Source: Octopus sinensis
Lineage: Eukaryota
Assembly (NCBI RefSeq): GCF_006345805.1
Contig: NC_043008.1
Location: 72,974,001-73,038,000 of the forward strand
Direction: 5' to 3'
DNA: 64,000 nucleotides
Shown: in pieces, positions 7,868 to 63,742 of the stretch
How the letters are laid out: every line of letters starts with the position of its first letter
Position numbering within the stretch: the stretch's first letter is position 1
The notes under the pieces: generated by a model
Databases searched by the model: none
The model's input: the letters and a program-made list of their open reading frames with translations, nothing else
Told to the model about the DNA's origin: nothing
Program-made: the position numbers and the translations under genes

Positions 7868-8068
7868 TATGTGTGCCACCCATGCTAGTGGCACATAAAA
7901 AGCACTCATTAATTTCTTGAAATGGTTGGTGTTAGAAAGGGCATCCAACCACAGAAACCATGCCAAATCAGACTGGACTTTGATGCAGTTTAACAGTTTC
8001 AATGAAGCCATCTAAACCCATGCCAGCATGGAAAGCAGATGTTAAGTGATAAGGATGATTGATGATAT
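7868..8068 (+). mobile_element. RTE-tail fragment (one of many short copies; others near 28040-28135, 31700-31810, 35370-35470, 35538-35990, 39236-39390, 44140-44340, 57950-58090, 59935-60230)
   Basis: Shared GAAGGGCATCCAGC...AAACCATGCC...AACCCATGCCAGCATGGAAAGCAGATGTT(AA)(GAT)n sequence matching the RTE 3' end. Confidence 0.75.
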
Positions 8069-15461: not shown

Positions 15462-15900
15462 TTTATTTTTTTACTTGTTTCAGTCGGCCACAGGACTTAT
15501 TCTTTGTAAGCCCAGTACTTACTATATCAATGTCTTTTTGCTGAACCGCTAAGTTATAGGGGACATAAACACATCCACATTAGTTGTCAAGTGATGGTGG
15601 GGGGACAAACAAAGACACAAAAACACACACACATAAATATATACATATATATATATGATGGGCTTCTTTCAGTTTCTGTCTACCAAATCCACTCACAAGG
15701 TTTTGGTCGGCCCAAGGCTATAGTAGAAGACACTTGCCCAAGGTGCCACGCAGTGAGACTGAACCCGGAACCACATCACTAATTGGTTGGCCCAAGGCTA
15801 AAGTAAAAGACACTTGCCCAAAATGCTATGCAGTGGGACTGAGTCTGGAACCATGTGGTTGAGAATCATACTGCTTACCACACTGCCACACCTGTGCCTA
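15462..15900 (-). mobile_element. SINE family A with duplicated head segment
   Basis: Reverse complement of family A; the GGCCCAAGGCTA..GTA.AAGACACTTGCCCAA block occurs twice (~15708 and ~15789). Confidence 0.85.
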
Positions 15901-16345: not shown

Positions 16346-17130
16346 AAGCATATGTTCTCTATTAACCTACCTGCAATTCCACTACATCGCTTGTGTGTCC
16401 TTAGCTTACATTGTGGAGAGTGTATGGAGTTTTTACCTATTCCTTTTCTGCATATTAAGCAAGGCTATTTCCTTGAAGGTACCAGAGTCCTGGCTTCTTT
16501 TCTAGTTACAAAAAAAACCTTCATCTTTGTGAAGTTTATGTTAAACTGCTTGATCCTAGATTTAGTTTTCATAGCTCTAATTTCATCTCTATTTCCCTTA
16601 TAGATTCAGCTATAAGAATTAGATCATTAGCATATAGAATTTCTCCTGGAAAGCCAGCCTTAAACTCACCTGTGATGGCCTGCAGAACAATGAAGAATAG
16701 GAGAAAGCTGAAGACTGAGCCTTGTTGGACTGCAGCCCTCGCACTAAATTCATCACTGAAATTATTTTTGACTCTCACTTTACTTAATGTATCTTTGTAC
16801 TTGGCTTGTATTGCCCTCACAAGCCATTTCTTTTCTTATGAGTGTCTGTATAAATTTTATTAGAACATTTAAATACCAAGCAACAGAAAAGAAGTGAGAT
16901 AAAAAAGGAAAAGAAATGGAAAAAAAGTGGGTATGGGGTGGGGTGGGGGTAAAGCAGGGGAAGATGGAAGGGGACTAGTGACCAGTACAAACTGATAGCA
17001 GCTGGCCAGGCTACTGCATTTATTGGTTTTTCTCTCTTCCATGTTACATGCAACACTTGGGTTTTCAGCCAATTTTGTAAAGATGGAGCTGGAGAAGCTG
17101 ATGCTGCACATTGTGCCCCAGACTAGAGAT
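16340..17130 (-). pseudogene. Old RTE LINE RT fragment (diverged relative of copy 1)
   Basis: Minus-strand translation AVQQGSVFSFLLFFIVLQAITGEFKAGFPGEILYANDLILIAES, followed after frameshifts by PCLICRKGIGKNSI...THKRCSG (the same zinc finger). The 16960-17130 part is weakly similar to the upstream RT motif. Confidence 0.85.
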
Positions 17131-17439: not shown

Positions 17440-17900
17440 GTTTTAGATGGTATTTAGTGGTAACACTATAAAGCCTGATTAGCAACAGTTCAGTATGTGA
17501 CACTATTAGTTACAACACCATTGACCACAATTAGCAATAATTCAGTGGGTCATATACTTTGTTATAAGACCACAGACTGTTATTAGTAACAATTTCATGT
17601 GATATAATTGCAATATATAAAACAACAAAGCAACAATTCAGTGTATAAAAGAATTAGTTACAAGATTACAGACCATAATTAGCAACAACCCAGTATGTGA
17701 TATAGTTGATAACAACACCATAGACCACAATTAGCAACAATTCAGTGTGATGTAATTAGTTACAATACTGCGGAACATAATTAGCAACAACTCAGTGAGG
17801 GGAATATTAGGTTATAGCAACATACACAGGAATTAGCGATAATGCTGTGTGATATAATTAGTTACAACACCACACACCTTGATTAGAAAACAATTCTGTG
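17440..17900. repeat. Degenerate ~50-bp minisatellite, ~9 copies
   Basis: Recurring ATTAGCAACAATTCAGTGTGATATA.TTAGTTACAACACCA.AGACCACA. Confidence 0.8.
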
Positions 17901-19437
17901 TGTACAAACACATTTCATATTGATAAAATGTAAAAACAAAATACGTTGAGATATATCCTGGTAGAATAACATTAGGGTTATACTCCTAAATATAAGCTGA
18001 CAGGTTACTTTACAAGAAACAGAACCACTGATTTGAAAACTTATTGGTCTCACTTCAGGTTTATTTATAACCTATCACATGATTTATTTTACAACAACAA
18101 AGACATAGAAATAATTTATGAACATAGAATAAGTTTTGACATATCTACTGAGGAGACTGGTATAACAGATTCAAAGACAGAATATTCAGTTTCTCTCATA
18201 ATTTGAACACCTCAGTGAATGATATAAGCACAACTTAGCCACAATAATTACACCACAAATTCTAGATTAGTTGACATATATTTCAGAACTTCATTTCTTA
18301 TGGACAGCAATAACAACCAATTCCACCAAGAAAAAAAAGTGATCTTTGAGTGTTATAGTTATGGTGGTGGTGTCACATGTTATGAAGCTGTACTGCATGG
18401 TTTCACAAAGTTAAAGTGTTTTGGTAGTCACATCTACTTAAAACAGTTATCCATAGCTTCCAAATCTTACAATAACCAGGAACTACTCAACACTTACAGT
18501 CTGTTGACAGCCATTGCATGATTAGCAATGGACAACAGTGATTTTCTGTTTTCCTTTACTTTTGAGGTTTTTTTTTTTTTGTTATTTCTTCCCATTTCAG
18601 TAAAATTCCTTATTTTTTTCCTTTCTCTCTCTCGCTCACTCACTCTCCACACACACATACATATATATTTCATTTCCAAATTGCAGTTGAATGTGACAAG
18701 TTGCTGTTAGATTTAACAGGTGTTATGCCCTGAAAGGAAGCTTGCATATATAATGACTGCAAGCCCACCAGTTACATCCTGAAACACACACATGCACACA
18801 CACATGACCATCATATACTAACATGAAAGAGAAGGAAATAAAATCAAGTATAAGAAAGAGAACAGCAGGAAAATGTAATAAAAAGAGAAAGGAGCTTAAA
18901 GGAGTGAAGCTAAACTTTAAAAGGCATTTCATATTTAAAGAGACATCCTAGCTTATTTATATTTCAGTCAAAAGATCAAAAATACTTGAATCCCTTCAAA
19001 CAGGACAATATCCTTCCCACACTCCTCCACTGTTCTTCCATTTCCCTATTTCTTGACTTACTTCTTTCTGATGGAATCATGAAAAGAAAGAAGCAATCTA
19101 GCACTTTTGGCAGTTTGAGTTTGTTAATGTAATGCAGAAATCCTCATTTGAAGTGTTTAGAAAGGAGTATTCAGTAGAATGTCAAAGAAAATAACTTCAT
19201 AAAGTTTGCAGTGTCTTTCTGGTTTTTTTTTTTTTTTTTGGTTCACTTCCAACTATAGTCAACATTACATTCCACTTTTATAGAGTCAATAAAACAACCC
19301 CAGCCAACAACTGGGATTAGTTCAATTGAACCATTACTTCTTTCATAACATATTAACTTATGCTTTAGCTAGAAATCATCTTTATCATTGCTGTTGTGAG
19401 TAGTGGAAGCAGAAGAGGCAGACTCATCATCATATCC

Positions 19438-24693: not shown

Positions 24694-25753
24694 GAAATAA
24701 TAGATAAATCTCCCTCAAATTGCACCCTGCTACCTGGTAAAAGGGATGGTCACAACTCAAACTGTTTTGATCATTGGTCTGCTCAATAAGCGTGGGCTTA
24801 ATATAAAACAATCCCATTCATTAACTAATAACAGCTTTGAATGACATTATTGGGCTGTACAACATGTGTTTCTGTGTTGCTACACTTTAGAGTTAGAGAT
24901 AATATGCCCACTATTCAGGGCCCATTAAAATCTGTTATTCTCATATGTAAGTAGCAAATAATAAATTTGCTAGTGTGTGCAAAGCCTTGCCAAGCTAGAA
25001 CTAACTCATCAAAGGTACATTCCAGCTTGACAAAGACATATTTAATAGTAAACTATATTTTACTAAAGATGATGATAATTATACTGAGAGCTACACTAGT
25101 TTTTATCCATCTTTCCTCAGCTATTGTGACTGGGTCCCTCAGTTTTTTACATGTCTTTTAAAATATGCTTTAATACTTTGCTTAAAATGTAATTATAGTT
25201 TGAGAGCTTAGTATCTTAGCACAACAGTTCTAACAATACTGTGTTGTTGCTGTGGTTTAAATGCATTTAATTGATTAATGAACAATACACTGTCATGGGT
25301 AAAAAATTTATCTAAAAGCCAAATTGTGTGAAGAAAATTTTCATTGCTAGAAATTAACAAACCTTTCAAACTTCAGAGATATGGGTGTATGTTGAAATAT
25401 TTAATTTTTTCTATAAAATGTAATCAGCAATGGAAACAGTGATATATAGATCAGAATATTGTTGGCACAAGACACTTCTTTAAGAGCTGCAACCTTATAA
25501 AGACAGACAGCTAAAGTGTTCATAGATCCCAGCAGAGCACTTAAAGACAACCAAAATAAATTACAGACCATGGGACTTCTTTGTCTGCCCCTAATGTCAG
25601 AAGAGTCTCTGGGGGTGGGGGAATAAAAAAAATATTCCTATTCTCTGCCTCAAAAATAGCCTGTGTGAGTGTGTGCATGCTTGTGTGTGTGCGCATGTAT
25701 GTATGTGGGTATGTATGTATGTACATAAATTTCTATATCCATATCGATATATA

Positions 25754-27972
25754 TCATCATCATCATCATCATCATCGTTTAGCGTCCGTTTTCCATGCTA
25801 GCATGGGTTGGACGGGTCAACTGGGGTCTGTGAAGCTGGAAGGCTTCGTCAGGCCCAGTCAGATCTGGCAGTGTTTCTACGGCTGGATGCCCTTCCTAAC
25901 GCCAACCACTCCGCGAGTGTAGTGGGTGTTTTTTACGTGCCACCTGCACAGGTGCCAGACAGAGCTGGCGAACGGCCACGAACGGATGGTGCTTTTACGT
26001 GTCACCTGCACGGGGCCAGGCGATGCTGGCAACGGACACGAACGGATGGTGCTTTTACGTGCCACCGACACAGGGCCAGACAGAGCTGGCAACCGGCCAC
26101 GAACGGACGGTGCTTTTACGTGTCACCGGCACGGGGGCCAGCCGAGGCTGGCAACGGACACGAACGGATGGTGCTTTTACGTACCACTGACACGGTTGCC
26201 AGACAGAGCTGGCAAACGGCCACGAGCGGACGGTGCTTTTACGTGTCACCGGCACGGGGGCCAGCCGAGGCTGGCAACGGACACGGACGGATGGTGCTTT
26301 TATGTGCCACCGACACGGGGCCAGACAAAGCTGGCAAACGGCCATGAACGGATGGTGCTTTTACGTGCCACCGACACGGGGCCAGACAGAGCTGGCCAAC
26401 GGCCACGAACGGATGGTGCTTTTACGTGTCACCGGCACGGGGCCAGGCGATGCTGGCAACGGACACGAACGGATGGTGCTTTTACGTGCCACCGACACGG
26501 GGCCAGACAGAGCTGGCAACCGGCCACGAGCGGACGGTGCTTTTACATGTCACCGGCACGGGGGCCAGCCGAGGCTGGCAACGGATGCGGACGGATGGTG
26601 CTTTTACGTGCCACCGACACGGGGCCAAGCAGAGCTGGCAAACGGCCATGAGCGAATGGTGCTGTTACGTGTCACCGGCACGGGTGCCAGACGAGGCTGA
26701 CAGCGGACACGAACAGATGGGTCACTTAACCCCTGCTTTCTGATATATGATTTGATTTTTATTGTTCTCACTGGTCTTGCCGGGTCTTCTCACGCACAGC
26801 ATACTTCCATAGGTCTCGGTCTCTGGTCATTTCCTTGGTGAGACCTAGAGTTCGAAGGTCGTGCTTCACCACCTCGACCCAGGTTTTCCTGGGTCTACCT
26901 CTTCCACAGGTCCCCTCAACTGCCAGGGTGTGGCACTTTTTCACACACCTATCTTCATCCATTCTCACCACATGACCATACCAGCGCAATCGTCTCTCTT
27001 GCACACAACATCTGATTCCGCTTAGGTCCAACTTTTCTCTCAAGGTACTTACACTCTGTCGACTATGAACACTGACATTACACATCCAACGGAGCATACT
27101 AGCTTCATTTCTCGCGAGCTTACGCATGTCCTCAGCAGTCACGGCCCATGTTTCACTGCCATGTAGCATGGCTGTTCGTACACATGCATCATACAGTCTG
27201 CCTTTTACTCTGAGCGAGAGGCCTTTAGTCACCAACAGAGGTAAGAGCTCCCTAAACTTTGCCCAGGCTATTCTTACTCTAGCCGTTACACTTTCAGCAC
27301 ACCCACCCCCACTACTGACTTGGTCACCAAGATAACGGAAGCTATCAACCACTTCTAGTTTTTCCCCCTGGAAAGTGACGGAAGTTGTTTTCTGCAGATT
27401 TTCAGAGGTTAATGCTCCCGAGCATCTGCCACATACAAAAACCATCTTCCTAGTTAGCCTTCGTATGACATTGCTGCACCTCTTATGTGTCCATAGGTTG
27501 CACTTGGTGCATCTTATAGAGTTTCTACCTACACCTTTTCTACAGATCGAGCAGGGCCATCTACCTGAAGGCGTTTGTGATTTGTCTACCTTCCTACTTA
27601 TTACGACTTTGGTTTTAGCTAGGTTGACTCTAAGGCCCTTCGATTCTAAACCATGCTTCCACACCTGAAACTTCTTCTCCAGTTCTGATAATGACTCAGC
27701 AATTAGAGCAAGGTCATCAGCATAGAGGAGCTCCCAGGGGCATCCTGTCTTGAATTCCTCCGTTATTGCCTGGAGGACTATGATAAATAGGAGGGGGCTG
27801 AGGACTGAGCCTTGGTGGACCCCTACCTCTACCCGGAATTCTTCACTGTACTCATTTCCAACCTTCACCTTACTAGCAGCGTCCCTGTACATGGCTTGCA
27901 CAGCTCTCACCAACCATTCTTCTATTCCTAGTTTCCTCATTGACCACCATATGAGGGATCGGGGGACTCGAA
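25754..27972 (-). mobile_element. RTE-clade LINE retrotransposon, young 5'-truncated copy 1 (RT C-terminal half, 3' UTR tandem array, (GAT)n tail)
   Basis: Minus-strand ORF with RT motifs GVHQGSVLSPLLF and LLYADDL and an RTE-type C-terminus (RLRWYGHVVRM...GRGRPRKTW). The 3' end reads ...GGAAAACGGACGCTAAAC(GAT)n, a short-repeat tail typical of RTE. Homology stops near 27972, inside the expected AFDRVPR motif. Confidence 0.95.
25925..26718. repeat. ~60-62 bp tandem array (13 units) in the 3' UTR of RTE copy 1
   Basis: Repeated core GGTGCTTTTACGTG(C/T)CACCG(A/G)CACGGGGCCAG-N6-CTGGCAACGG; 13 units counted by eye. Confidence 0.95.
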
Positions 27973-27991
27973 AAGAAACAAAAATTCTCAT
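26768..27991 (-). CDS. RTE ORF (5'-truncated reverse transcriptase with embedded PHD-type zinc finger); open frame, but the ATG is fortuitous
   Basis: 407-aa stop-free frame; YADD at 27713-27724; C-x2-C-x10-C-x2-C-x4-H-x2-C-x14-C-x2-C at 27422-27553; TGA at 26768-26770. The endonuclease and RT N-terminus are missing, so this copy cannot be autonomous. Confidence 0.85.
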   Translation of the reverse strand: MRIFVSFRVPRSLIWWSMRKLGIEEWLVRAVQAMYRDAASKVKVGNEYSEEFRVEVGVHQGSVLSPLLFIIVLQAITEEFKTGCPWELLYADDLALIAESLSELEKKFQVWKHGLESKGLRVNLAKTKVVISRKVDKSQTPSGRWPCSICRKGVGRNSIRCTKCNLWTHKRCSNVIRRLTRKMVFVCGRCSGALTSENLQKTTSVTFQGEKLEVVDSFRYLGDQVSSGGGCAESVTARVRIAWAKFRELLPLLVTKGLSLRVKGRLYDACVRTAMLHGSETWAVTAEDMRKLARNEASMLRWMCNVSVHSRQSVSTLREKLDLSGIRCCVQERRLRWYGHVVRMDEDRCVKKCHTLAVEGTCGRGRPRKTWVEVVKHDLRTLGLTKEMTRDRDLWKYAVREKTRQDQ

Positions 27992-28242
27992 TGAAGATTT
28001 TTGGCAAAAAGTTGCACAAATCTGTCCTGATCAAGAGCCCTATCTGTCGGGAAAGGCATGGTCTGACATGGAATATCATTTCAAACTGTCCATCCTACAC
28101 CACCATGACATATGGACATTAAATGATGAGGATGAGATATATATGTATACATGTAAATATATAAATGTATATTTGCATGTGTCTGTATGTACACACACAT
28201 ACACACACATACACATTTTGGTTACAAATTTTGGCATAAGGC

Positions 28243-28290
<48 letters not shown>

Positions 28291-29195
28291 ACAATATGAA
28301 AACAGTATGATTGATCTGGTTAAAGAAATTCAAAACATAATAGTATTATTAAATGCAATGGAATATAAAACCACCTTGTACTTACTTTACCTTCTCATCT
28401 ACTCTAACAGTTTCTCTAATGACTGACTTTTCATAACACCATCCCTTCAAATTGATTTATCCATTTGAAGGCCTTGTAAAAGGCGGAAATGTGTGATTTC
28501 AGTGAAATATTGTTATGTCAAAGTTTAGTATGAAATAAAGTTATGTATCAATGAATCTTGCATAGCCTTTTGGGAGAATCCATTAATTTGTATGTCACAT
28601 ATTCCATTGTTCTCAGTCAAGTTCGATATGTAGATAAGGGTGTAAACCTTTATACAAAGCAGATCTCTCTGCTATGTCAGTGCCAGAGATTTATGTCAGC
28701 AGAAAATGAAGCTAATAACATTGAAATGCTCATCATTCACATGGAAAGGGAGAAGTTTAATGTAAATTATAGAAATGAAGAATTTCTTAATATTACCAGA
28801 TGTCTTCAGCTATCTTTATAATTCACAGAGGTTCCACAGTTTAAGTATCTCAGCTAACAGTTGCATGGTAATGTAGCTAAATATTAAATATTATTGTTGA
28901 GTGCATATATATATATATATTTATAGTGCTTGACCGAGCAAAAGATATATATATATATATATGTATGTATTACAAATTCAAGCTTGGACCTCTTTCCTTA
29001 ACCCCTTATAGTTATCGGATGGCTATGTGGATAAGGTAATAATCTACGTTACTTGCTCACTGTCAATTGTTCAAACGTGCTGCTGGCATTATATTACATT
29101 TCTTGGCAGTATATTTTGCACTCTATCTGTAAAACCTCAGTTCACCTAGCTGTTGAAAATACATCCCATATCAGTAGGGGACATTACCTGCAATA

Positions 29196-29636
29196 TACGA
29201 GGGCAGTATCATTAGCACATGGAGCAAAATGCCTAGCAGCATTTTGTCTGTCTTTACATTATGAGTTCGAATTCCACGAAGGTGAACTTTGCTTTTCATC
29301 CTTTCGAGGTCAATAAAATAAGTACCAGTTGAATATTGGAGCCCATGTAACTGACTTAACCCTTCCTCTTAAATTGCAGGCTTTGTGCCAAAATTTGAAA
29401 CCAATATTACCTGCAAAATAAGGCTGCAAGCTGGTGGAATCATTAGCACATTGGGCAAAATGCTTAGCAGTATTTAGTTCATCTTCACACTCTGGGTTCA
29501 AATTCTGCCAAGGTTAACTTTGCCTTTCATCCTTTCAAGGTAGATAAAATAAGTACCAGTTCAATACTGAGGTCAATCTAATTGATTTACTCCTTCCCCT
29601 TAAATTGCTGGCCATGTGTCAAAATTTTTAATTAAT
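29196..29636 (+). mobile_element. Two tandem SINE family B copies (29196-29405, 29421-29636)
   Basis: Each has CATTAGCAC..GG.CAAAATGC.TAGCAG, GTTC.AATTC, AATAAGTACCAGTT; separated and flanked by ATTACCTGCAA(A)TA. Confidence 0.85.
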
Positions 29637-30167
29637 ATTACCTGCAATAGACTGTATCATCTCCAGGTAAGTATTTATCTTATCTTATAAACATCATGAA
29701 ACCATAAGCATCCACTAGCTTTTAGAATTATTCGGGTAATAGGAAGTATTTATATTCATGCATTAACTTTTTATCCTCCAAGCTAGTGAAATACTGTTGC
29801 AATGGAGACAATTTTAATAGTTTCAATCATCTATAGTAGACATTTTTCATCCAGTCCTCTCAGTAACTACATGTCAATATCAAGCATACAAGATATCTTA
29901 AATGTAGTCACAAAATCTGCTAGAAACAACAGCTATATCTTGCATAAATTATATCATACCATTATCTGGAAAATTACACATTAAATAATGTAATCCTTGG
30001 GGAAAGAAATGGTAGATTATGGATAGTATACCTTTGATTTATTAGTCTGCTAGCTAGACACATGTTGAGCTAGAGCTAAATACTAACTCCTCTGATTTAC
30101 ATAATCATACAGAAGTTATATTTTTTTATGATTTTCAATTGAATTTCAACACGATCTTATAAAAACA

Positions 30168-30890
30168 TCAGGCATAGCTGTGTAATAAGAAGCTTGCTTC
30201 TCAACCAAATGGTTCTAGGTTTAGTTCCACAGTATGGCACCTTGGGTATGTGTCTTCTGCTATAGCCCCGTCTGACCAAAGTTTTGTGAGTTGTTTTGGA
30301 AGAGAGAAACTAAAAGAAGCCCATCCTGTGTGTGTGTGTTTGTTCCCTACTATCACCGGACACTTTGTTGTTCAGCAAAAGAGACTGATAGAATGGATAC
30401 CAGGCCTTAAAATGAACGTACTGGGATCAATTCATTTGAGTAAAGAATTATTTAAGGTGGTACCCCAACATGGCTGCAGTCTAATGATTGAAACAATTAA
30501 AAGGTAAAAGATGCCACCTGTAGGCATGGCTGTGTGGTAAGAAGTTTGCTTCTCAAGTACATGGGTTCTGGATTCAGTCTCATTGTGTGACACCTTGAGT
30601 AAATATCTACTATAGCCCCAGGCCAATCAAAGCCTAACTGATTTGGTCAATGGAAACTGAAAGAAACCCATTGTGTGTGTGTGTGTGTGTTTATATTTGT
30701 CCCATACCACTGCTTGACAACCGTTCATTAATTTAAATCCTTGTAACTTAGTGGTTCAGCAAAAGAGATTGTCAGAATAAGTACCAGGCTTTAAACAAAC
30801 ACAAGTACTGGGGGTCAATTCAGTCAACATTCAAAGCAATGTCCCAGCAAGACCGTAGTCCAATGACTGAAACAAGTAAAAGATAAAAGA
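30168..30890 (+). mobile_element. Two tandem SINE family A copies (30168-30510, 30522-30890)
   Basis: Two heads (GGCAT(A/G)GCTGTGT) and two tails (GATTGAAACAATTAAAAG, GACTGAAACAAGTAAAAG). Confidence 0.8.
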
Positions 30891-31063: not shown

Positions 31064-31377
31064 ACCACACCCACATCAACATGTAAAACATTGATAACAT
31101 ATTATAACCACTCCCACATAGTCTCATCAACTATCAACCTATCTATCCCTGACATTGTGACCACAACCACATCAACATACAAAACACTGATATCATATTA
31201 CAACCACTCCCACATACAGTCTCATCGACTATCAACCTATCTAGCCCTGACATTGTGACCACAACCACATCAACATATAAAACACTGATATCATATTACG
31301 ACCACTCCCACATACAGTCTCATCGACTATCAACCTATCTAGCCCTGACATTGTGACCACAACCACATCAACATATC
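31064..31377. repeat. 98-bp minisatellite, ~3.2 copies
   Basis: GACATTGTGA recurs at 31151, 31249 and 31347; copies 2 and 3 are nearly identical. Confidence 0.95.
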
Positions 31378-32649: not shown

Positions 32650-33270
32650 GTTAGCATATGTGATAGCCCATTTGCATAATAACATGTGTAATAGCCTGAA
32701 TATAATTTGCCTTTTTAGCTTGTATGATAAAACTAAAATGTCATTGGTAACATATATGAAAGCTTATAGCTGTTCTGGTTAACATGCATAATAGTCTATA
32801 ACTGTCCTTGCTAACATGTAGAATAGCCTATAACTGTCCTTGCTAATATGTAGAATAGCCTATAACTGTCCTTGCTAACATGTAAAATAGCCTACAAATG
32901 TCATCACTAACATGTAAAATAGCTTTTAAATGTCATTACTAACATATAGAAAGTTTATGACTGTCATTGCTAACATGTATAAATGTTGTTACTGACGTGC
33001 ATCTTAGCCTGTATCATTGATAACATGTACAATTGCCAATTATTATCATTGCTAACATGTAAAATAGCCTATAAAGGCCATTACTAACCTGAATGCAAAC
33101 CTCTAATGGTCATTGCGAAAACACATTATGACCTATAGCTGTCATTGTTATCATGTCCTATAACTGTCATTGCTAACATATATAACAACACACAACTGTC
33201 GTTGCTAACATGCTTGACAGTATTTAAACTCGTTATTATCATGTATAAAAGGTTCTGAGTGATCTTGCTA
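32650..33270. repeat. Degenerate 32-bp minisatellite
   Basis: AACATGTAGAATAGCCTATAACTGTCCTTGCT at 32781, 32813, 32845 and 32877, decaying on both sides. Confidence 0.9.
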
Positions 33271-43516: not shown

Positions 43517-43980
43517 TCATCATCATTATCGTTTAATGTCTGTTTTCTATGCTGACTGGGGTCTGGGAAGCCAGGAGGCTGCACCAGGCTCCAGTCTCAT
43601 CTTGCAGTGTTTCTACAGCTGGATGCCCTTCCTAACACCAACCACTCCAAGAGTGTAGTGGATGCTTTTTACGTGCCCCCAGCACAGGGGCCAGAGGGGG
43701 CTGACAATGACCACAATTGGTTGGTGCTTTTTATGTGCCACCGGCACAGAAGCCAGTTAAGGTACAGCTGGCATCAGCCATATTTGGATGGTGCTTTTTA
43801 CATGCCACCGGCACGGGGATCACAACTACAATTTCCATTTGATTTTGGTTTTGATGTACTTGACTCAATAGGTCTCCTCAAGCATGGCATGTCACCCTAC
43901 AATCCAAGGTACTTTTGAATGGGCTGGGTATGTGATACTGGTGTAGGTTACAGCTGTGGAACCACTCAACCCATTCCAGC
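43517..43980 (-). mobile_element. Old RTE 3' UTR fragment with 3 diverged array units
   Basis: CATCAT tail, GCTGGATGCCCTTCCTAAC-ACCAACCACTCC, three GGTGCTTTTTA(C/T)GTGCCACCGGCAC units; inner UTR resembles 63330-63400. Confidence 0.8.
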
Positions 43981-45489: not shown

Positions 45490-45891
45490 TCTTTTACTCT
45501 TTTACTTGTTTCAGTCATTTGACTGCAGCCATGCTGGAGCATGACCTTTAGTCAAGCAAATCGACCCCAGGACTTATTTTTTGTAAGCCTAGTACTTATT
45601 CAATCGGTCTCTTTTGCTGAAACATTAAGTCACGGGAACGTAAACACACCAGCATCTGTTGTCAAGTGATTTTGTGGGGGACAAACACAGACAGACAAAC
45701 ATATATACACACATACATACATATACATATATACGACGGGCTTCTTTCAGTTTCCCTCTACCAAATCCACTCACAAGATTTTGGTCAGCCCGAGGCTATA
45801 GTAGAAGACTCTTGCTCAAGGTGCCCCACAGTGGGAATGAAACCCGGAACCATGTGGTTGGTAAGCAAGCTACTTACCACACAGCCACTCC
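45490..45891 (-). mobile_element. SINE family A, full length, young
   Basis: Close reverse-complement match to 2456-2846; abuts (TA)n at the head. Confidence 0.9.
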
Positions 45892-53171: not shown

Positions 53172-54860
53172 ATCATCATCATCATCATCATCGTTTAGCG
53201 TCCGTTTTCCATGCTAGCATGGGTTGGACGGGTCAACTGGGGTCTGTGAAGCTGGAAGGCTTCGTCAGGCCCAGTCAGATCTGGCAGCGTTTCTACGGCT
53301 GGATGCCCTTCCTAACGCCAACCACTCCGCGAGTGTAGTGGGTGTTTTTTACGTGCCACCTGCACAGGTGCCAGACAGAGCTGTCGAACGGCCACGAACG
53401 GATGGTGCTTTTACGTGTCACCGGCACGGGGCCAGGCGATGCTGGCAACGGACACGAACGGATGGTGCTTTTACGTGCCACCGACACGGGGCCAGACAGA
53501 GCTGGCAACCAGCCACGAACGGACGGTGCTCTTACGTGTCACCGGCACGGGAGCCAGCCGAGGCTGGCAACGGACGCAAGCGGATGGTGCTTTTACGTGC
53601 CACCGACACGGTTGCCAGACAGAGCTGGCAAACGGCCACGAGCGGACGGTGCTTTTACGTATCACCGGCACGGGGGCCAGCCGAGGCTGGCAACGGACAC
53701 GGACGGATGGTGCTTTTACGTGCCACCGACACGGGGCCAGACAAAGCTGGCAAATGGCCATGAATGGATGGTGCTTTTACGTGCCACCGACACGGGGCCA
53801 GACAGAGCTGGCCAACGGCCTCGAACGGATGGTGCTTTTACGTGTCACCGGCACGGGGCCAGGCGATGCTGGCAACGGACACGAACGGATGGTGCTTTTA
53901 CGTGCCACCGACACGGGGCCAGACAGAGCTGGCCAACAGCCTCGAACGGATGGTGCTTTTACGTGTCACCGGCACGGGGCCAGGCGATGCTGGCAACGGA
54001 CACGAACGGATGGTGCTTTTACGTGCCACCGACACGGGGCCAGACAGAGCTGGCAACCGGCCACGAACGGACGGTGCTTTTACGTGTCACCGGCACGGGG
54101 GCCAGCCGAGGCTGGCAACGGACGCGGACGGATGGTGCTTTTACGTGCCACCGACACGGGGCCAGACAGAGCTGGCAAACGGCCACGAACGGATGGTGCT
54201 TTTACGTGTCACCGGCACGGGGGCCAGCCGAGGCTGGCAACGGACGCGAACAGATGGTGCTTTTACGTGCCACTGACACGGTTGCCAGACAGAGCTGGCA
54301 AACGGCCATGAGCGGACGGTGCTTTTACGTGTCACCGGCACGGGGGCCAGCCGAGGCTGGCAACGGACACGGACGGATGGTGCTTTTACGTGCCACCGAC
54401 ACGGGGCCAGACAGAGCTGGCCAACGGCCACGAACGGACGGTGCTTTTACGTGTCACCGGCACGGGGCCAGGTGAAGCTGGCAACGAACACGAACGGATG
54501 GTGCTTTTACGTGCCACCGACACGGGGCCAGGCAGAGCTGGCAAACGGCCATGAGCGAATGGTGCTTTTACGTATCACCGGCACGGGTGCCAGACGAGGC
54601 TGACAGCGGACACGAACAGATGGGTCACTTAACCCCTGCTTTCTGATATATGATTTGATTTTTATTGTTCTCACTGGTCTTGCCGGGTCTTCTCACGCAC
54701 AGCATACTTCCATAGGTCTCGGTCTCTGGTCATTTCCTTGGTGAGACCTAGAGTTCGAAGGTCGTGCTTCACCACCTCGACCCAGGTTTTCCTGGGTCTA
54801 CCTCTTCCACAGGTCCCCTCAACTGCCAGGGTGTGGCACTTTTTCACACACCTATCTTCA

Positions 54861-54862
<2 letters not shown>
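53172..54862 (-). mobile_element. RTE LINE copy 2, heavily 5'-truncated (last ~65 codons plus 3' UTR)
   Basis: 54601-54862 matches 26699-26959 with no difference seen; tail region 53172-53340 differs from copy 1 at one position seen. Abuts (TA)n at the truncation point. Confidence 0.95.
53341..54620. repeat. ~60-62 bp tandem array (21 units) in the 3' UTR of RTE copy 2
   Basis: Same unit as 25925-26718; 21 units counted. Confidence 0.95.
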
Positions 54863-54899
<37 letters not shown>

Positions 54900-55004: not shown

Positions 55005-55410
55005 CAAACGTTGGGCTTCATGGAGGAAATGACAAGAGACCGAGACCTTTGACAACAGGCCATGCTTGAGATGACCTGTCAAGTCAAGCAAAATCATAGT
55101 TGTGGCCAATGCTGGTGTCACATAACTGGCCCAAAAAGAGCACCTTACAAGCATTGGGCCCCAGGGGCACAATGTGGCTGATGCTAGTGTAACATAACTA
55201 GAACCTGTTCTGGTGGCACATAAAAGCACCCATCACACACTTGGAGTGGTTGGTGTTAAGGAAGGGCATCTAGCCATAGAAACCATACCAAATCAGAATG
55301 GACCCTGATGCAGCCCCTCAGCTTACCAGACCAAGTCAAACTGTTCAACCCATGCCAACATGGACAATGGACGTTTGATGATGATCATGATGATGATAAT
55401 AATGATGATA
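55005..55410 (+). mobile_element. Old RTE 3' fragment (ORF end plus 3' UTR with 1-2 degenerate array units)
   Basis: GAGGAAATGACAAGAGACCGAGACCTT (EEMTRDRDL), TGGTGGCACATAAAAGCACC unit, then tail AACCCATGCCAACATGGACAATGGACGTTTGATGATGAT. Confidence 0.8.
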
Positions 55411-57815: not shown

Positions 57816-58089
57816 CTTTGCATTTGTGTATGTGTATGTCTTTGTATTTATATTAGATAAAGATGAAAGTTTCAGTCACTATTCTTGATGAGTATAAAAG
57901 TCTTATAGAACATCATGTTTGAGACAATATATGATATCGGGCATCATCATCAGTTAACGTCTGCTTTCCATGGTGACATGGGTTGGACAGTTTGACTGAG
58001 GGCTAGCGAGCCAGAAGGCTGCACCAGGTTCCAATCTGATTTGGCAAGGTTTCTACAACTGGATGCCCTTCCTAATGCCAACCACTCCA

Positions 58090-58860
58090 TGGCTGTATGG
58101 TAAGAATTTTGTTTCCTAACTACATGGTTCCAGGTTCAGCCCCACTGTGTGACACCTTGGCCAAGTGTCTTCTACTATAGCCTCAGGTTAATGAAAGCCT
58201 TGTGAGTGGATTTCCTAGATGGGAACTAAAAGAAGCCTGTCATATATATATATAAACACACATACACACATATATATATCATCAACATCATCATCATCGT
58301 TTGTGTGTGTGTGTGTGTGTTTGTGTTTGTTCCCCACTGTCGCTTGACAACTGGTGTTGGTGTGCTTACATCCCTGAAAATTAGCAGTTCAGCAAAGAGA
58401 TTGATAGAATAAGTACAAGGCTAAAAAAGATATGTACTGGAGTCAATTCATTCGACTAAAACCTCAAGGTGGCCCAGCATGGCTATAGTCTAATGACTGA
58501 AACAAGTAAAAGAGAGGAAAGAAAGATCCACCTACCAATATACATATAATCTTTTACCCATTTACTTGTTACAGTTATTGAAATGTTGCCATGCTGGAGC
58601 ACCACCTTGTAGGTCTACTTGAGCAAATTGCCCCTTGTGTTTATTTGAATTTGGGTATTTATCCTTTTAGACATATTTGTGGGGGGATAAAAAATCTAAC
58701 ACTGGTTGTCAAGCAGTGGAAGGGTGACAAATACAACTACAAGGACACAACAGACAGCTACAGAGTTTCTATCAACCAAATTCACTTCCAGGCCGTTGGT
58801 TGGCCTGAGGCTGAACCCAACACTACATGGTTATGAAATGAAATTCTTAACCACACAGCG
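58090..58860. mobile_element. Two SINE family A copies in opposite orientation (58090-58515 +, 58555-58860 -)
   Basis: Tail GACTGAAACAAGTAAAAGAG followed ~40 bp later by its reverse complement TTTACTTGTTACAGTTATTG. Confidence 0.75.
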
Positions 58861-62589: not shown

Positions 62590-62684
62590 GTATATATGTG
62601 TGTGCATATATATATATGTATATATATCTACATATATTTGTATATATATGTATATACATATGCAAATTTATGTATATGTATATA

Positions 62685-63549
62685 TCATCATCATCATCAT
62701 CATCATTTAACGTCCGCTTTCCATGCTAGCATGGGTTGGACGGTTCAACTGGGGTCTGGGGAGCCCGAAGGCCGCACCAGGCCAGTCAGATCTGGCAGTG
62801 TTTCTACAGCTGGATGCCCTTCCTAACGCCAACCACTCCGAGAGTGTAGTGGGTGATTTTATGTGCCACCGACACAGGTGCCAGACGAGGCTGGCGAACG
62901 GCCACGCTCGGATGGTGTTTTTATGTGCCACCGACACAGGTGCCAGACGAAGCTGGCAAACGGCCACGCTCGGATGGTGTTTTTATGTGCCACCGACACA
63001 GGTGCCAGACAAGGCTAGCAGACGACCACGCTCAGATGGTGTTTTTATGTGCCACCGACACAGGTGCCAGACGAGGCTGGCGAACGGCCACGCTCGGATG
63101 GTGTTTTTATGTGCCACCGACACAGGTGCCAGACAAGGCTAGCAGACGACCACGCTCGGATGGTGTTTTTTTTTTTGTGCCACCGACACAGGAGCCAGAT
63201 TAGGCTGGCGATCGGCCACGATTGGATGGTGATTGTTACGTGCCCACAGCATGGAGGCCAGTCGGTGCGGTACTGGCTACGGCCACGTTCGGATGGTTTT
63301 CTTGTGTGCCACCGGCACTGGTACCACAAAGATACAAATTCCATTGATGTTCATCTATTTTGATTTTGTTTGATTTTCACTTGCCTCAACAGGTCTTCAC
63401 AAGTGTCACAAGAAGGAAGGTATGCACAGGTGGACTGACTACGTCCCAGGTAGGGGTCATGGGTTATGGCCTGACTAGTCTTGCCAGGTCTTCTCACGCA
63501 CAGCATACTTCCATAGGTCTCGGTCTCTAGTCATTTCCTTGGTGAGACC
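62685..63549 (-). mobile_element. RTE LINE copy 3, related subfamily, 5'-truncated
   Basis: Encodes GLTKEMTRDRDLWKYAVREKTWQD* (minus strand), has a different inner 3' UTR, ~7 array units of ~61 bp (62851-63320) and the same (GAT)n tail; flanked by TA-rich microsatellite on both sides. Confidence 0.9.
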
Positions 63550-63551
63550 AA

Positions 63552-63586
<35 letters not shown>

Positions 63587-63608: not shown

Positions 63609-63742
63609 GGTGCAGACATGGCTGTGTGCTAAGAAGCTTGCTTTCCAACCACATGGTTCCGGGTTCAGTCCCACTGCATGGCACCTTTGGCCAACCAAAG
63701 CCATGTCAGTGGATTTGGTTGATGGAACTGAAAGAAGTCTGT

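What the first reader, a model, noticed from the sequence alone, without database searches (positions are those of the whole stretch)
25925..26718. Reverse-transcriptase-linked array of ~60-bp double-hairpin units in the 3' UTR of an RTE LINE
Seen: about 50 bp past the RT stop codon lies an ~800-bp array, roughly 60-65% GC with about six CpG per unit, in an AT-rich window. Each unit has a constant segment (GGTGCTTTTACGTG) and two potential hairpins. One is GTG(C/T)C-ACC-G(A/G)CAC. The other has a fixed GCCAG/CTGGC stem and a variable 6-nt insert: ACAGAG (A), GCGATG (B), CCGAGG (C), or ACGAGG in the terminal unit D. Stems persist while loops vary, and loop type is linked to hairpin-1 type (A with GTGCCACCGACAC, B/C with GTGTCACCGGCAC). 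Order: A B A C A' C A'' A B A C A D. Established: LINE RTs recognise 3' UTR stem-loops. Inference: the array may be a multivalent RNA scaffold for RNP assembly or packaging, a source of small RNAs, or a structural module under selection. I do not know of a description of such an ordered hairpin array in an RTE 3' UTR, but cannot search to confirm.
Basis: partly seen in the sequence, partly recalled or inferred. Interest (0 to 1): 0.82.

Follow-up and report, generated by a model that had tools for sequence, protein, structure and literature searches.

The report
Repeat array in octopus LINE tail
A 61-base unit repeated 13 times (21 and about 8 times in two sister copies nearby) fills the 3' untranslated region of a young octopus RTE-type jumping gene. 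It is a real, length-variable minisatellite built from a conserved 3'-end module. The tests possible here give no solid evidence that the array as such is a selected RNA scaffold.

Summary
At 25931-26720 there are 12.9 head-to-tail copies of a 61-bp unit with 63% GC and 6.0 CpG per unit. The array starts 47 nt after the stop codon of a minus-strand, 5'-truncated RT ORF and is followed by a ~150-nt unique tail and (GAT)n.

It is a minisatellite with a 122-bp dimeric higher-order repeat. A second, independent insertion in the window has flanks 99.4-99.6% identical to the first but carries 21 units. The 8-unit difference comes as blocks of 6 and 2 units. A third copy has about 8 units. Older relatives in the window and in Octopus vulgaris have 1-5 heterogeneous units. 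Relatives in a cnidarian, a bivalve and an unidentified ENA contig have no units and almost no 3' UTR.

Hairpin 2 has conserved arms and a hypervariable loop but no significant covariation. An alternative helix gets only weak support.

The best reading is a conserved cephalopod-specific 3'-UTR module amplified by in-register slippage or unequal exchange. Copy number is not tightly constrained. Tandem repeats carried by transposable elements are a known kind, and a repeat-dominated 3' UTR was noted in passing for octopus RTE-2_OV. Interest is modest.

The parts
26768..27991 (-). 5'-truncated RT open reading frame of copy 1. It is 407 aa with RVT_1 plus a PHD-like zinc finger and ends ...REKTRQDQ*.
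   Evidence: ORF list. Pfam RVT_1 at 58.3 bits; PHD at 20.7 bits, below its cut-off. 2179 homologues at E<=1e-10, best 83% to O. bimaculoides and O. vulgaris proteins.
26721..26767 (-). 47-nt spacer between the stop codon and the first (partial) unit.
   Evidence: Sequence read. The unit HMM starts at 26720.
25931..26720 (-). The array of copy 1. It has one partial unit (26683-26720, unit positions 23-61), 12 full 60-62-nt units and a terminal partial unit: the first 19 positions lie at 25931-25949, and its box continues to about 25926. Alpha and beta monomers alternate as a 122-bp dimer.
   Evidence: TRF, unit listing, nhmmer unit map, lag-2 identity 90% against lag-1 83%.
25777..25930 (-). 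Unique 3' tail. It is shared at 72-91% identity with at least 8 older elements in the window, and its last ~60 nt are shared with relatives in other phyla.
   Evidence: blastn of the tail against the window. 92% over 63 nt to Hydractinia locus L006 and 88% to L004.
25783..25814 (-). Terminal stem-loop CGUCC-AAC-CCAUG-CUAG-CAUGG-AAAAC-GGACG, just before UAA and (GAU)n. It is the likely RT-recognition element.
   Evidence: Palindrome at 25793-25806. The same fold is predicted in octopus and Hydractinia, z about -1.8 to -2.0. The sequence is nearly identical across phyla.
25753..25776 (-). (GAT)n terminal microsatellite, the 3' end of the element.
53172..54865 (-). Copy 2 of the same young subfamily. 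It comprises (GAT)n, the tail, a 21-unit array (53347-54623), the spacer and the last ~195 nt of the ORF. Its 5' truncation point differs from copy 1, so it is an independent insertion.
   Evidence: TRF 21.0 copies. Flanks 99.4-99.6% identical to copy 1. Unit-level alignment: copy 2 equals copy 1 plus blocks of 6 and 2 units.
62684..63552 (-). Copy 3, a sister subfamily. It has a tail 91% identical, 62-bp units x6.3 plus two degenerate units (62852-63321), an extra ~150-nt spacer and the ORF end. Some CpG sites have decayed to TpG.
43517..43818 (-). Older relative: tail plus 2.3 heterogeneous units.
55024..55400 (+). Older relative on the other strand: ORF end, 2-3 degenerate units, tail and (GAT)n.

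Best explanation
The array is a minisatellite (VNTR) inside the 3' UTR of a young RTE-type LINE subfamily of an octopus.

Its unit is a roughly 61-nt 3'-UTR module specific to the cephalopod branch of this LINE group. On the sense strand the module reads: quasi-palindrome GUGCCGGUGGCAC, conserved box GUAAAAGCACC, linker, GCCAG-N6-CUGGC. Older subfamilies carry the module 1-5 times in heterogeneous form. It always ends with a half-unit fused to the tail.

In the young subfamily the module was amplified. Two diverged monomers (alpha and beta) became a 122-bp dimer. The array now grows and shrinks in dimer register. The likely mechanisms are unequal exchange, replication slippage or RT template switching between repeats. 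The quasi-palindromes let neighbouring units pair, which probably helps. Hence 13 and 21 units in two independent insertions whose flanks are 99.5% identical.

The module itself, above all the GGUGGCACGUAAAANCACC core, is probably a cis-acting RNA element of the element's 3' UTR. The number of copies is not tightly constrained. Target-primed reverse transcription is most likely directed by the deeply conserved terminal stem-loop in the tail, not by the array.

Shown: anatomy, higher-order repeat, copy-number variation, conservation of the module, its restriction to cephalopod relatives, and the lack of significant covariation. Inferred: the mechanism of expansion, the cis-acting role of the module and the role of the terminal hairpin.
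For: - Real tandem array in the 3' UTR, sense = minus strand.
- Higher-order repeat: lag-1 identity 82-83%, lag-2 90-91%.
- Copy 2 equals copy 1 plus inserted blocks of 6 and 2 units, all even numbers, and the edge units are identical.
- The flanks are 99.4-99.6% identical, but the 5' truncation points differ (about 27985 against 54865), so these are independent insertions.
- Unit numbers are 13, 21, about 8 and 2.3 in the window, and 1.3-5.4 in ten arrays from 40 kb of O. vulgaris.
- The array is bounded by the short direct repeat ACCCA (GACC|CATC ... CACC|CACT). This fits the slipped-strand initiation model summarised in PMC3389668.
- The module is conserved across subfamilies: 13 invariant and 24 nearly invariant of 61 columns in 45 distinct units. 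A contig with only 71% RT identity (L002) keeps GGTGGCACGTAAAATCACC in 52-bp units.
- Relatives from Hydractinia, Mercenaria and an ENA contig have no units. Their ORFs end about 10-40 nt before the terminal ATG/GAT-type repeat.
- Substitutions between homologous units of copies 1 and 2 are not depleted in the stems (8 against 7.2 expected). The array diverges faster than its flanks (22/757 against 2/417, p=0.004), and 9 of the 22 changes are CpG transitions.
- Literature: a repeat makes up most of the 3' UTR of octopus RTE-2_OV (PMC9115989). 23% of human minisatellites and satellites derive from transposable elements, and they expand by local duplication (PMC3389668).
Against: Several signals hint that more than neutral drift acts on the units.
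- The hairpin-2 loop is about 5 times more variable than its arms.
- Transitions in the stems are biased towards those that are G.U-compatible on the sense strand. Array-level events are 20 against 7 in stems and 37 against 68 outside (p=0.0004). These events share ancestry, and the conservative count gives p=0.15.
- An alternative helix (columns 5-9 with 24-29) plus hairpin 2 has 3 pairs changed on both sides, against 0.7 in shuffles; 13 of 500 shuffles reach this.
- Array CpG o/e is 1.0 while the ORF of the same element is 0.44.
- The youngest subfamily has the most units, which could mean that more units help.
- Alpha and beta are complementary in trans at the very positions that break hairpin 1.

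The sample is small: about 50 units, few independent lineages, and no full-length master copy. No RNA, methylation or population data were available. The mechanism of expansion was not observed.
Confidence: 0.65

Rival explanations
1. One reading: the array is a selected multivalent RNA scaffold. Each unit, or each alpha-beta dimer, folds into a defined domain that binds the element's protein or a host factor. More units would then give better RNP assembly, cis-preference or stability.
For: The module is conserved across subfamilies and the hairpin-2 loop is hypervariable. There is a sense-strand wobble bias in the stems and weak covariation for helix 5-9/24-29 plus hairpin 2. Dimers and the whole array fold better than shuffles: z -1.8 to -3.2 and -3.1. 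The alpha-beta H1 duplex is -26.1 kcal/mol, against -13.9 for alpha-alpha and -22.8 for beta-beta. The youngest subfamily has the most units.
Against: Single units are not more stable than shuffles. The antisense strand folds about as well (z -2.6, and -2.3 and -3.2 for dimers), so the signal reflects palindromic repeats and is not strand-specific. The real unit order is no better than shuffled order (-290.7 against -288.2 +/- 2.4; 9 of 60 shuffles as low). Unit number varies from 13 to 21 between near-identical copies. Relatives in other phyla do without the array. There is no Rfam match.
Confidence: 0.17
2. The array acts at the DNA level. An 0.8-1.3 kb CpG-island-like block of repeated ACGTG/CCGG motifs would serve as a cis-regulatory or epigenetic element. 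It could be an antisense promoter, a transcription-factor binding array, or a way to escape or attract methylation. This could affect the element or neighbouring genes.
For: CpG o/e is 1.0 in a window at 0.24, and the same element's ORF is at 0.44. CpG positions are conserved among unit types. The signal is equally strong on both strands, as expected for a DNA feature.
Against: There are no expression, methylation or binding data. CpG richness may simply be copied from one CpG-rich founder unit. CpGs decay in older copies (copy 3: CpG o/e 0.90, 4.5 CpG per unit, TTTTATGTG), and 9 of the 22 differences between the young copies are CpG transitions. Together these suggest the arrays are methylated and not protected after insertion.
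Confidence: 0.08
3. The array is a source of small RNAs (piRNA or siRNA). The inter-unit duplexes and possible antisense transcription would feed silencing pathways.
For: Only indirect. Long imperfect inter-unit duplexes are predicted. There are many dispersed copies in both orientations.
Against: Nothing here tests it. There is no Rfam miRNA or other match inside the array. Any abundant transposable element yields piRNAs, so this would not be specific to the array.
Confidence: 0.05
4. The array is an unrelated satellite that landed in the LINE, or an assembly artefact.
For: None found.
Against: Three copies in the window and ten arrays in O. vulgaris show the same junctions with the ORF end or spacer on one side and the tail on the other. 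The edge units are identical in copies 1 and 2. Units were never found without the tail next to them in the 104 kb examined.
Confidence: 0.02

Closest known systems
Octopus RTE-clade LINEs, in particular RTE-2_OV (Petrosino et al. 2022, PMC9115989); the RTE-BovB type is expanded in cephalopods (PMC10294476)
   Same: An octopus LINE with an RT and a 3' UTR of several hundred nt. [quoted passage not shown] Young, possibly active copies exist.
   Different: The paper calls the repeat a 'microsatellite' and gives no unit, structure or copy-number data. No sequence was available to compare, so identity with this family is unproven. Here the repeat is a 61-nt minisatellite with a dimeric higher-order repeat. 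The RT carries a PHD-like finger, which that paper does not mention.
Mouse L1 5'-UTR monomer arrays (A, Tf, Gf monomers of about 200 bp) - from general knowledge
   Same: Tandem monomers in a LINE UTR. Subfamily-specific monomer types. Copy number varies between copies of one subfamily. The array ends in a truncated monomer joined to unique sequence.
   Different: They lie at the 5' end and act as the promoter. Their units are longer and are not palindromic. Function is demonstrated there, but not here.
SVA VNTR region and other minisatellites derived from transposable elements (Ahmed and Liang 2012, PMC3389668)
   Same: A GC- and CpG-rich VNTR carried inside a non-LTR retroelement and spread by retrotransposition. 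Length differs between copies. Expansion is by local duplication.
   Different: SVA is a composite, non-autonomous primate element. Its VNTR is not built from a conserved 3'-UTR module of an autonomous LINE.
Stringent-type LINE 3' stem-loops (eel UnaL2, zebrafish ZfL2, R2, plant L1 examples; review PMC3747384)
   Same: Conserved hairpins in the 3' UTR of a LINE that ends in short tandem repeats rather than poly(A).
   Different: Those are single hairpins at the extreme 3' end and are shown to be needed for retrotransposition. Here that description fits the terminal stem-loop at 25783-25814, not the array, which lies 150 nt or more upstream and is dispensable in relatives from other phyla.
Higher-order repeats of satellite DNA (for example alpha satellite) - from general knowledge
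   Same: Diverged monomers alternate. Identity is higher at the higher-order period. Gains and losses come in whole higher-order units.
   Different: The scale is about 1 kb inside a mobile element, not megabase arrays at centromeres.

Membership tests
RTE-clade non-LTR retrotransposon | Reverse transcriptase domain of the non-LTR type | tested here: met
   Pfam RVT_1 at 58.3 bits. Thousands of RT homologues.
RTE-clade non-LTR retrotransposon | Single ORF with an N-terminal apurinic-type endonuclease | tested here: inconclusive
   All copies in the window are 5'-truncated. The upstream region of relative L004 is also truncated.
RTE-clade non-LTR retrotransposon | 3' end made of short tandem repeats, not poly(A) | tested here: met
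   (GAT)n in all copies and relatives. RTE 3' repeats such as (TTG)n and (TTGATG)n are listed in PMC3747384.
RTE-clade non-LTR retrotransposon | Very short 3' UTR (from general knowledge: Malik and Eickbush 1998) | tested here: not met
   The octopus 3' UTR is about 1.0 kb in copy 1 and about 1.5 kb in copy 2. In contrast, relatives L004-L006 have ORFs ending about 10-40 nt before the terminal ATG/GAT-type repeat.
RTE-clade non-LTR retrotransposon | RT groups with RTE reference elements in a phylogeny | not tested
   No reference RTE sequences or clade-labelled library were available. The assignment rests on the 3' features and on literature context.
Minisatellite / VNTR carried by a transposable element | Head-to-tail units of 10-100 bp | tested here: met
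   Period 61, 12.9 copies.
Minisatellite / VNTR carried by a transposable element | Copy number differs between copies | tested here: met
   13, 21, about 8 and 2.3 units in the window; 1.3-5.4 in O. vulgaris.
Minisatellite / VNTR carried by a transposable element | Allelic length polymorphism at one locus | not testable with these tools
   No population or read data.
Higher-order repeat | Identity is higher at the multi-unit period than between neighbours, and indels come in whole higher-order units | tested here: met
   Lag-2 identity 90-91% against lag-1 82-83%. Copy 2 has blocks of 6 and 2 extra units.
Conserved structured RNA element | Fold more stable than dinucleotide shuffles, on one strand | tested here: inconclusive
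   Single units z +0.63, +0.05, -1.46. Dimers z -1.8 to -3.2 on both strands. Whole array z -3.1 sense and -2.6 antisense, with only 20 shuffles.
Conserved structured RNA element | Compensatory covariation in the proposed stems | tested here: not met
An alternative helix gives weak support only (13/500). The GGUG/CACC register gives none.
Conserved structured RNA element | Match to a curated RNA family | tested here: not met
   No Rfam hit in the array at E<=1.
Stringent-type LINE 3' recognition element | Lies at the extreme 3' end next to the terminal repeats and is conserved among relatives | tested here: not met
   The array lies 150 nt or more upstream and is absent from relatives in other phyla. 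The terminal stem-loop at 25783-25814 does meet this feature.
Stringent-type LINE 3' recognition element | Shared with a partner SINE | tested here: inconclusive
   One SINE body (58089-58237) is joined to the tail without units, but 12 other SINE bodies in the window lack this tail.

The most novel reading that the evidence does not exclude
The alpha/beta alternation is selected. Alpha (C4/A10) and beta (U4/G10) each spoil the intra-unit hairpin but are perfectly complementary to each other in trans. Each 122-nt dimer would then close into a discrete domain: a 13-bp inter-unit stem enclosing the conserved GCACGUAAAAGCACC box and a GCCAG hairpin. The array would be a string of 6-10 such domains acting as a multivalent platform for the element's ORF protein. 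This would be a cephalopod-specific addition to an RTE lineage that elsewhere has essentially no 3' UTR.
Probability: 0.1. Interest if true: 0.6.

Novelty: new member of a known kind. Interest (0 to 1): 0.3.

Why it matters
If the ordinary reading holds, the finding documents how a LINE seeds CpG-rich, length-unstable minisatellites of about 1 kb across an octopus genome. There are three arrays in 64 kb here. One such array has been annotated as a protein-coding gene in O. vulgaris. This is useful for repeat annotation, for assembling and amplifying these elements, and for interpreting the reported brain expression of octopus RTEs.

The comparative result is of more general interest. A LINE lineage whose ORF runs to the very 3' end in a cnidarian and an unidentified ENA contig, and to within about 40 nt of it in a bivalve, has in cephalopods acquired a long 3' UTR. 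That UTR is built from a conserved repeated module placed in front of an ex-coding, deeply conserved terminal hairpin. This gives a tractable system to ask what, beyond the terminal hairpin, a stringent-type LINE needs in its 3' UTR.

Tried and rejected
- Rfam at E<=1 over 25000-29000: only sub-threshold miRNA-like hits on (TG)n/(TATG)n outside the array.
- Exact 20-mer GGTGGCACGTAAAAGCACCA in the metagenome, prokaryotic-genome and viral collections: 0 hits each.
- The stop-free 241-aa antisense ORF over the array used as a protein query: one hit only, an O. vulgaris 'hypothetical protein' lying on another array. No credible Pfam domain. It is not coding.
- Exact look-up of the window's RT protein and of P0042: not on record.
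- Search of the supplements of PMC9115989 for the unit or tail sequence, to test identity with RTE-2_OV: nothing.
- Search for an endonuclease upstream of relative L004: that copy is also truncated.
- Origin of the unit from the element's own ORF or from relatives in other phyla: no similarity.
- GGUG/CACC register for the box stem: conserved, but every departure is a mismatch.
- Real alpha/beta order against shuffled unit order: no significant gain in folding energy.
- My own first idea that a partner SINE proves the array dispensable: withdrawn, because only 1 of 13 SINE bodies carries this tail.
- L007, a second contig from the same metagenome project as L002: its 3' UTR is too diverged to add units.
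Full report
**What is there**

Tandem Repeats Finder reports one array at 25931-26720 with period 61, 12.9 copies and 81% matches. The array stands out in composition. It has GC 0.63, 78 CpG (6.0 per unit) and CpG o/e 1.00. The rest of the window has GC 0.35 and CpG o/e 0.24.

The sense strand is the minus strand. A 407-aa ORF (27991..26768) has a Pfam RVT_1 domain and a sub-threshold PHD-like finger. It has thousands of RT homologues, the closest (83%) from Octopus bimaculoides and O. vulgaris. The ORF stops 47 nt before the first partial unit.

After the array come a unique tail of about 150 nt and (GAT)n. The copy is 5'-truncated at about 27985. The host is therefore an octopod. The species was not determined.

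**More copies in the same window**

The window holds several more copies, all relevant to interpretation.

- Copy 2 (53172-54865, minus strand) belongs to the same young subfamily. Its tail and ORF end are 99.4% and 99.6% identical to copy 1. Its 5' truncation point differs, so it is an independent insertion. It has 21 units.
- Copy 3 (62684-63552) is a sister subfamily with a tail 91% identical. It has 62-bp units x6.3 plus two degenerate units, an extra spacer and visible CpG decay.
- Older relatives at 43517-43818 and 55024-55400, and near 7923, 35530 and 59930, have 1-3 heterogeneous units in front of the same tail.
- Two 20-kb O. vulgaris loci were fetched through protein hits. They contain ten further arrays of 1.3-5.4 units.
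- An ENA contig with only 71% RT identity has 52-bp units. These share just GGTGGCACGTAAAATCACC with the window's unit.

**Anatomy of the unit and of the array**

On the sense strand the unit has four parts:
- the quasi-palindrome GUGYCGGUGRCAC;
- the box GUAAAAGCACC;
- a linker AUCCGUUCGUGKCCGUU;
- GCCAG-N6-CUGGC followed by CCC.

Two monomer classes alternate. Alpha has GUGCC..GACAC and loop CUCUGU. Beta has GUGUC..GGCAC and loop CCUCGG or CAUCGC. The classes also differ at column 36 and by a 1-nt indel.

Neighbouring units are 82-83% identical, while units two apart are 90-91% identical. This is a 122-bp dimeric higher-order repeat. A unit-level alignment shows that copy 2 equals copy 1 plus blocks of 6 and 2 units, which are whole dimers. 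The edge units are identical in both copies.

The array is bounded by the short direct repeat ACCCA. This fits initiation by slippage between short repeats, a model summarised in PMC3389668.

Homologous units of the two copies differ at 22 of 757 positions, against 2 of 417 in the flanks (p=0.004). Of the 22 changes, 18 are transitions and 9 are CpG transitions.

**Tests of the hairpin claims**

*Thermodynamics.* Single units fold no better than dinucleotide shuffles (z +0.63, +0.05, -1.46). GCCAG/CUGGC is predicted in two of the three and in all dimer folds. Dimers reach z -1.8 to -3.2, and the whole array reaches -3.1 sense and -2.6 antisense. This gain comes from pairing between the quasi-palindromes of neighbouring units. 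It is equally strong on both strands, as expected for any tandem array of a palindromic motif.

*Covariation.* I aligned 45 distinct units from all sources.
The covariation score (0.078) is below every shuffle. Pair 4-10 is a C.A mismatch in 17 units, and on the opposite strand the other monomer class is the mismatched one.
- RNAalifold prefers a different helix. Columns 5-9 pair with 24-29 (CGGUG with CACC-A-UCCG), which presents the conserved GCACGUAAAAGCAC as a loop, together with hairpin 2. The consensus energy is only -4.2 kcal/mol.
- That alternative structure has 3 pairs changed on both sides, against 0.7 in shuffles (13 of 500 reach it). It was derived from the same alignment, and the three compensated cells are single units, at least two of them through changes at CpG sites.
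- The simple GGUG/CACC register is conserved everywhere but shows no covariation.

*Pattern of variation.*
- The hairpin-2 loop is the most variable stretch of the unit. Its mean column entropy is about 1.08, against about 0.23 for the arms among older units (my region labels in that output are shifted by one column).
- Transitions inside the putative stems lean towards G.U-compatible ones on the sense strand. Counted per array, there are 20 against 7 in stems and 37 against 68 outside (p=0.0004). These events share ancestry, and the conservative count is not significant (p=0.15).
- The 22 recent differences between copies 1 and 2 are not depleted in the stems (8 against 7.2 expected).

Taken together, the module is conserved and hairpin 2 is plausible. 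Hairpin 1 as drawn is not supported. There is no statistically solid evidence for a selected RNA structure in the data reachable here.

**An oddity**

Alpha and beta differ exactly at the two positions that would pair in hairpin 1. They are Watson-Crick complementary to each other in trans. The alpha-beta duplex is -26.1 kcal/mol, against -13.9 for alpha-alpha and -22.8 for beta-beta. This could mean that the dimer is the folding unit.

Three points argue for caution. It is a single evolutionary event. My rough estimate of the chance probability is 0.05-0.1. The real unit order folds no better than shuffled orders (-290.7 against -288.2 +/- 2.4; 9 of 60 as low). A dimeric higher-order repeat needs no selection. 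Once two variants sit side by side, in-register exchange produces it.

**Wider comparison**

I fetched relatives at 48-56% protein identity from Hydractinia (L006), Mercenaria (L005) and an ENA contig (L004). They have no units. Their ORFs end about 10-40 nt before the terminal ATG/GAT-type repeat.

The last ~60 nt of the octopus tail are 92% identical to the Hydractinia 3' end. In Hydractinia that stretch is coding (...[23 protein letters not shown]). In octopus the same frame still reads [12 protein letters not shown], and another frame reads ARSDWA*. The two are out of frame with each other and lie about 1 kb past the real stop.

The stretch folds into the same two-tier stem-loop in both species, CGUCC..CCAUG-CUAG-CAUGG..GGACG. 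That terminal element, not the array, is the natural candidate for the RT-recognition hairpin of a stringent-type LINE (background: PMC3747384). The spacer, units and tail architecture is therefore a cephalopod-lineage addition.

I could not establish a partner SINE. One SINE body is joined to the tail without units, but 12 others in the window are not.

**What is known**

Petrosino et al. [quoted passage not shown] They say it makes up most of the ~600-nt 3' UTR and prevented PCR (PMC9115989). No sequence is given, so identity with this family is open. A 2026 repeat annotation of O. vulgaris does not describe it either (PMC13282606).

Tandem repeats carried and spread by transposable elements are well documented (PMC3389668). 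The closest analogues in behaviour are mouse L1 5' monomer arrays and the SVA VNTR (general knowledge). I file this as a new member of a known kind.

RTE membership itself is only partly tested. The RT domain and the microsatellite terminus are met. The endonuclease and the phylogeny are untested. The hallmark short 3' UTR is not met in octopus.

**Verdict**

The array is real, accurately described and correctly placed in a LINE 3' UTR. The best-supported explanation is a length-variable minisatellite with a dimeric higher-order repeat, made by amplifying a conserved cephalopod-specific 3'-UTR module. The module may well be functional. The evidence that the array as such is a selected multivalent scaffold is weak, and the specific 'double hairpin' model is half wrong. 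Interest is modest (0.3). The scaffold reading keeps a probability of roughly 0.1-0.2.

Noticed in passing
window 25755-25815 (minus strand); L006 4373-4435; L004 4822-4886: The last ~60 nt of the octopus element are 88-92% identical to the 3' ends of relatives from a cnidarian (Hydractinia) and an unidentified ENA contig. In those relatives the stretch is coding (...[11 protein letters not shown]). In octopus it is an out-of-frame relic about 1 kb past the real stop. This is either an extremely conserved cis-element or a sign of horizontal transfer.
   Followed up: partly
window 27420-27560 (minus strand), aa 140-190 of the RT ORF: A Cys/His-rich PHD-like finger (WPCSICRKGVGRNSIRCTKCNLWTHKRCS...) sits after the RT palm/thumb region. 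Pfam PHD scores 20.7 bits, below its cut-off, but the domain is precomputed for most homologues across phyla. It is unusual for a textbook RTE element.
   Followed up: partly
L003 10001-10504 (O. vulgaris GCA_951406725.2, OX597836.1): A 167-aa 'Hypothetical predicted protein' annotated in O. vulgaris is the stop-free antisense reading of another such array. It is very probably an annotation artefact.
   Followed up: yes
protein P0042: A protein labelled 'MAG: Herbaspirillum sp.' is 73% identical to this octopus RT. It probably reflects animal DNA binned into a bacterial metagenome-assembled genome.
   Followed up: no
window 58089-58237 joined to 57942-58088 (minus strand); also 15661-15888, 2276-2613, 30174-30668, 45739-45887, 63618-63737: An abundant SINE-like body (...GGGCTGAACCTGGAACCATGT...) occurs 13 times in the window. 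It is once fused directly to the RTE tail in place of its usual ...TCTGCACC end, and once forms an 80-bp tandem duplication (15703-15853).
   Followed up: partly
whole window: Outside the arrays the window is strongly CpG-depleted (o/e 0.24, GC 0.35). The young element's ORF is at 0.44 and its array at 1.0.
   Followed up: partly
window 28135-28299, 25677-25749 and 28901-28971: Sub-threshold Rfam 'miRNA' and other small-RNA matches (mir-3149, mir-297, mir-466 and others) fall on (TG)n/(TATG)n low-complexity DNA next to the element. They are artefacts of simple repeats.
   Followed up: yes
window 31064-31376, 32739-32979, 17478-17902, 29208-29647: Other minisatellites unrelated to this family: 98 bp x3.2, 32 bp x7.6, 52/102 bp x8/2.5, and 231 bp x1.9.
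   Followed up: no
window 16382-16838 (minus strand): An older, 67-73% identical fragment of a related RT.
   Followed up: no
window 63322-63470; L001 11270-11450; L003 10500-10690: Copy 3 and the O. vulgaris copies carry a 150-190-nt spacer between the stop codon and the units, with (AAATC)-like short repeats. The young subfamily (copies 1 and 2) has replaced it with a 47-nt spacer.
   Followed up: partly
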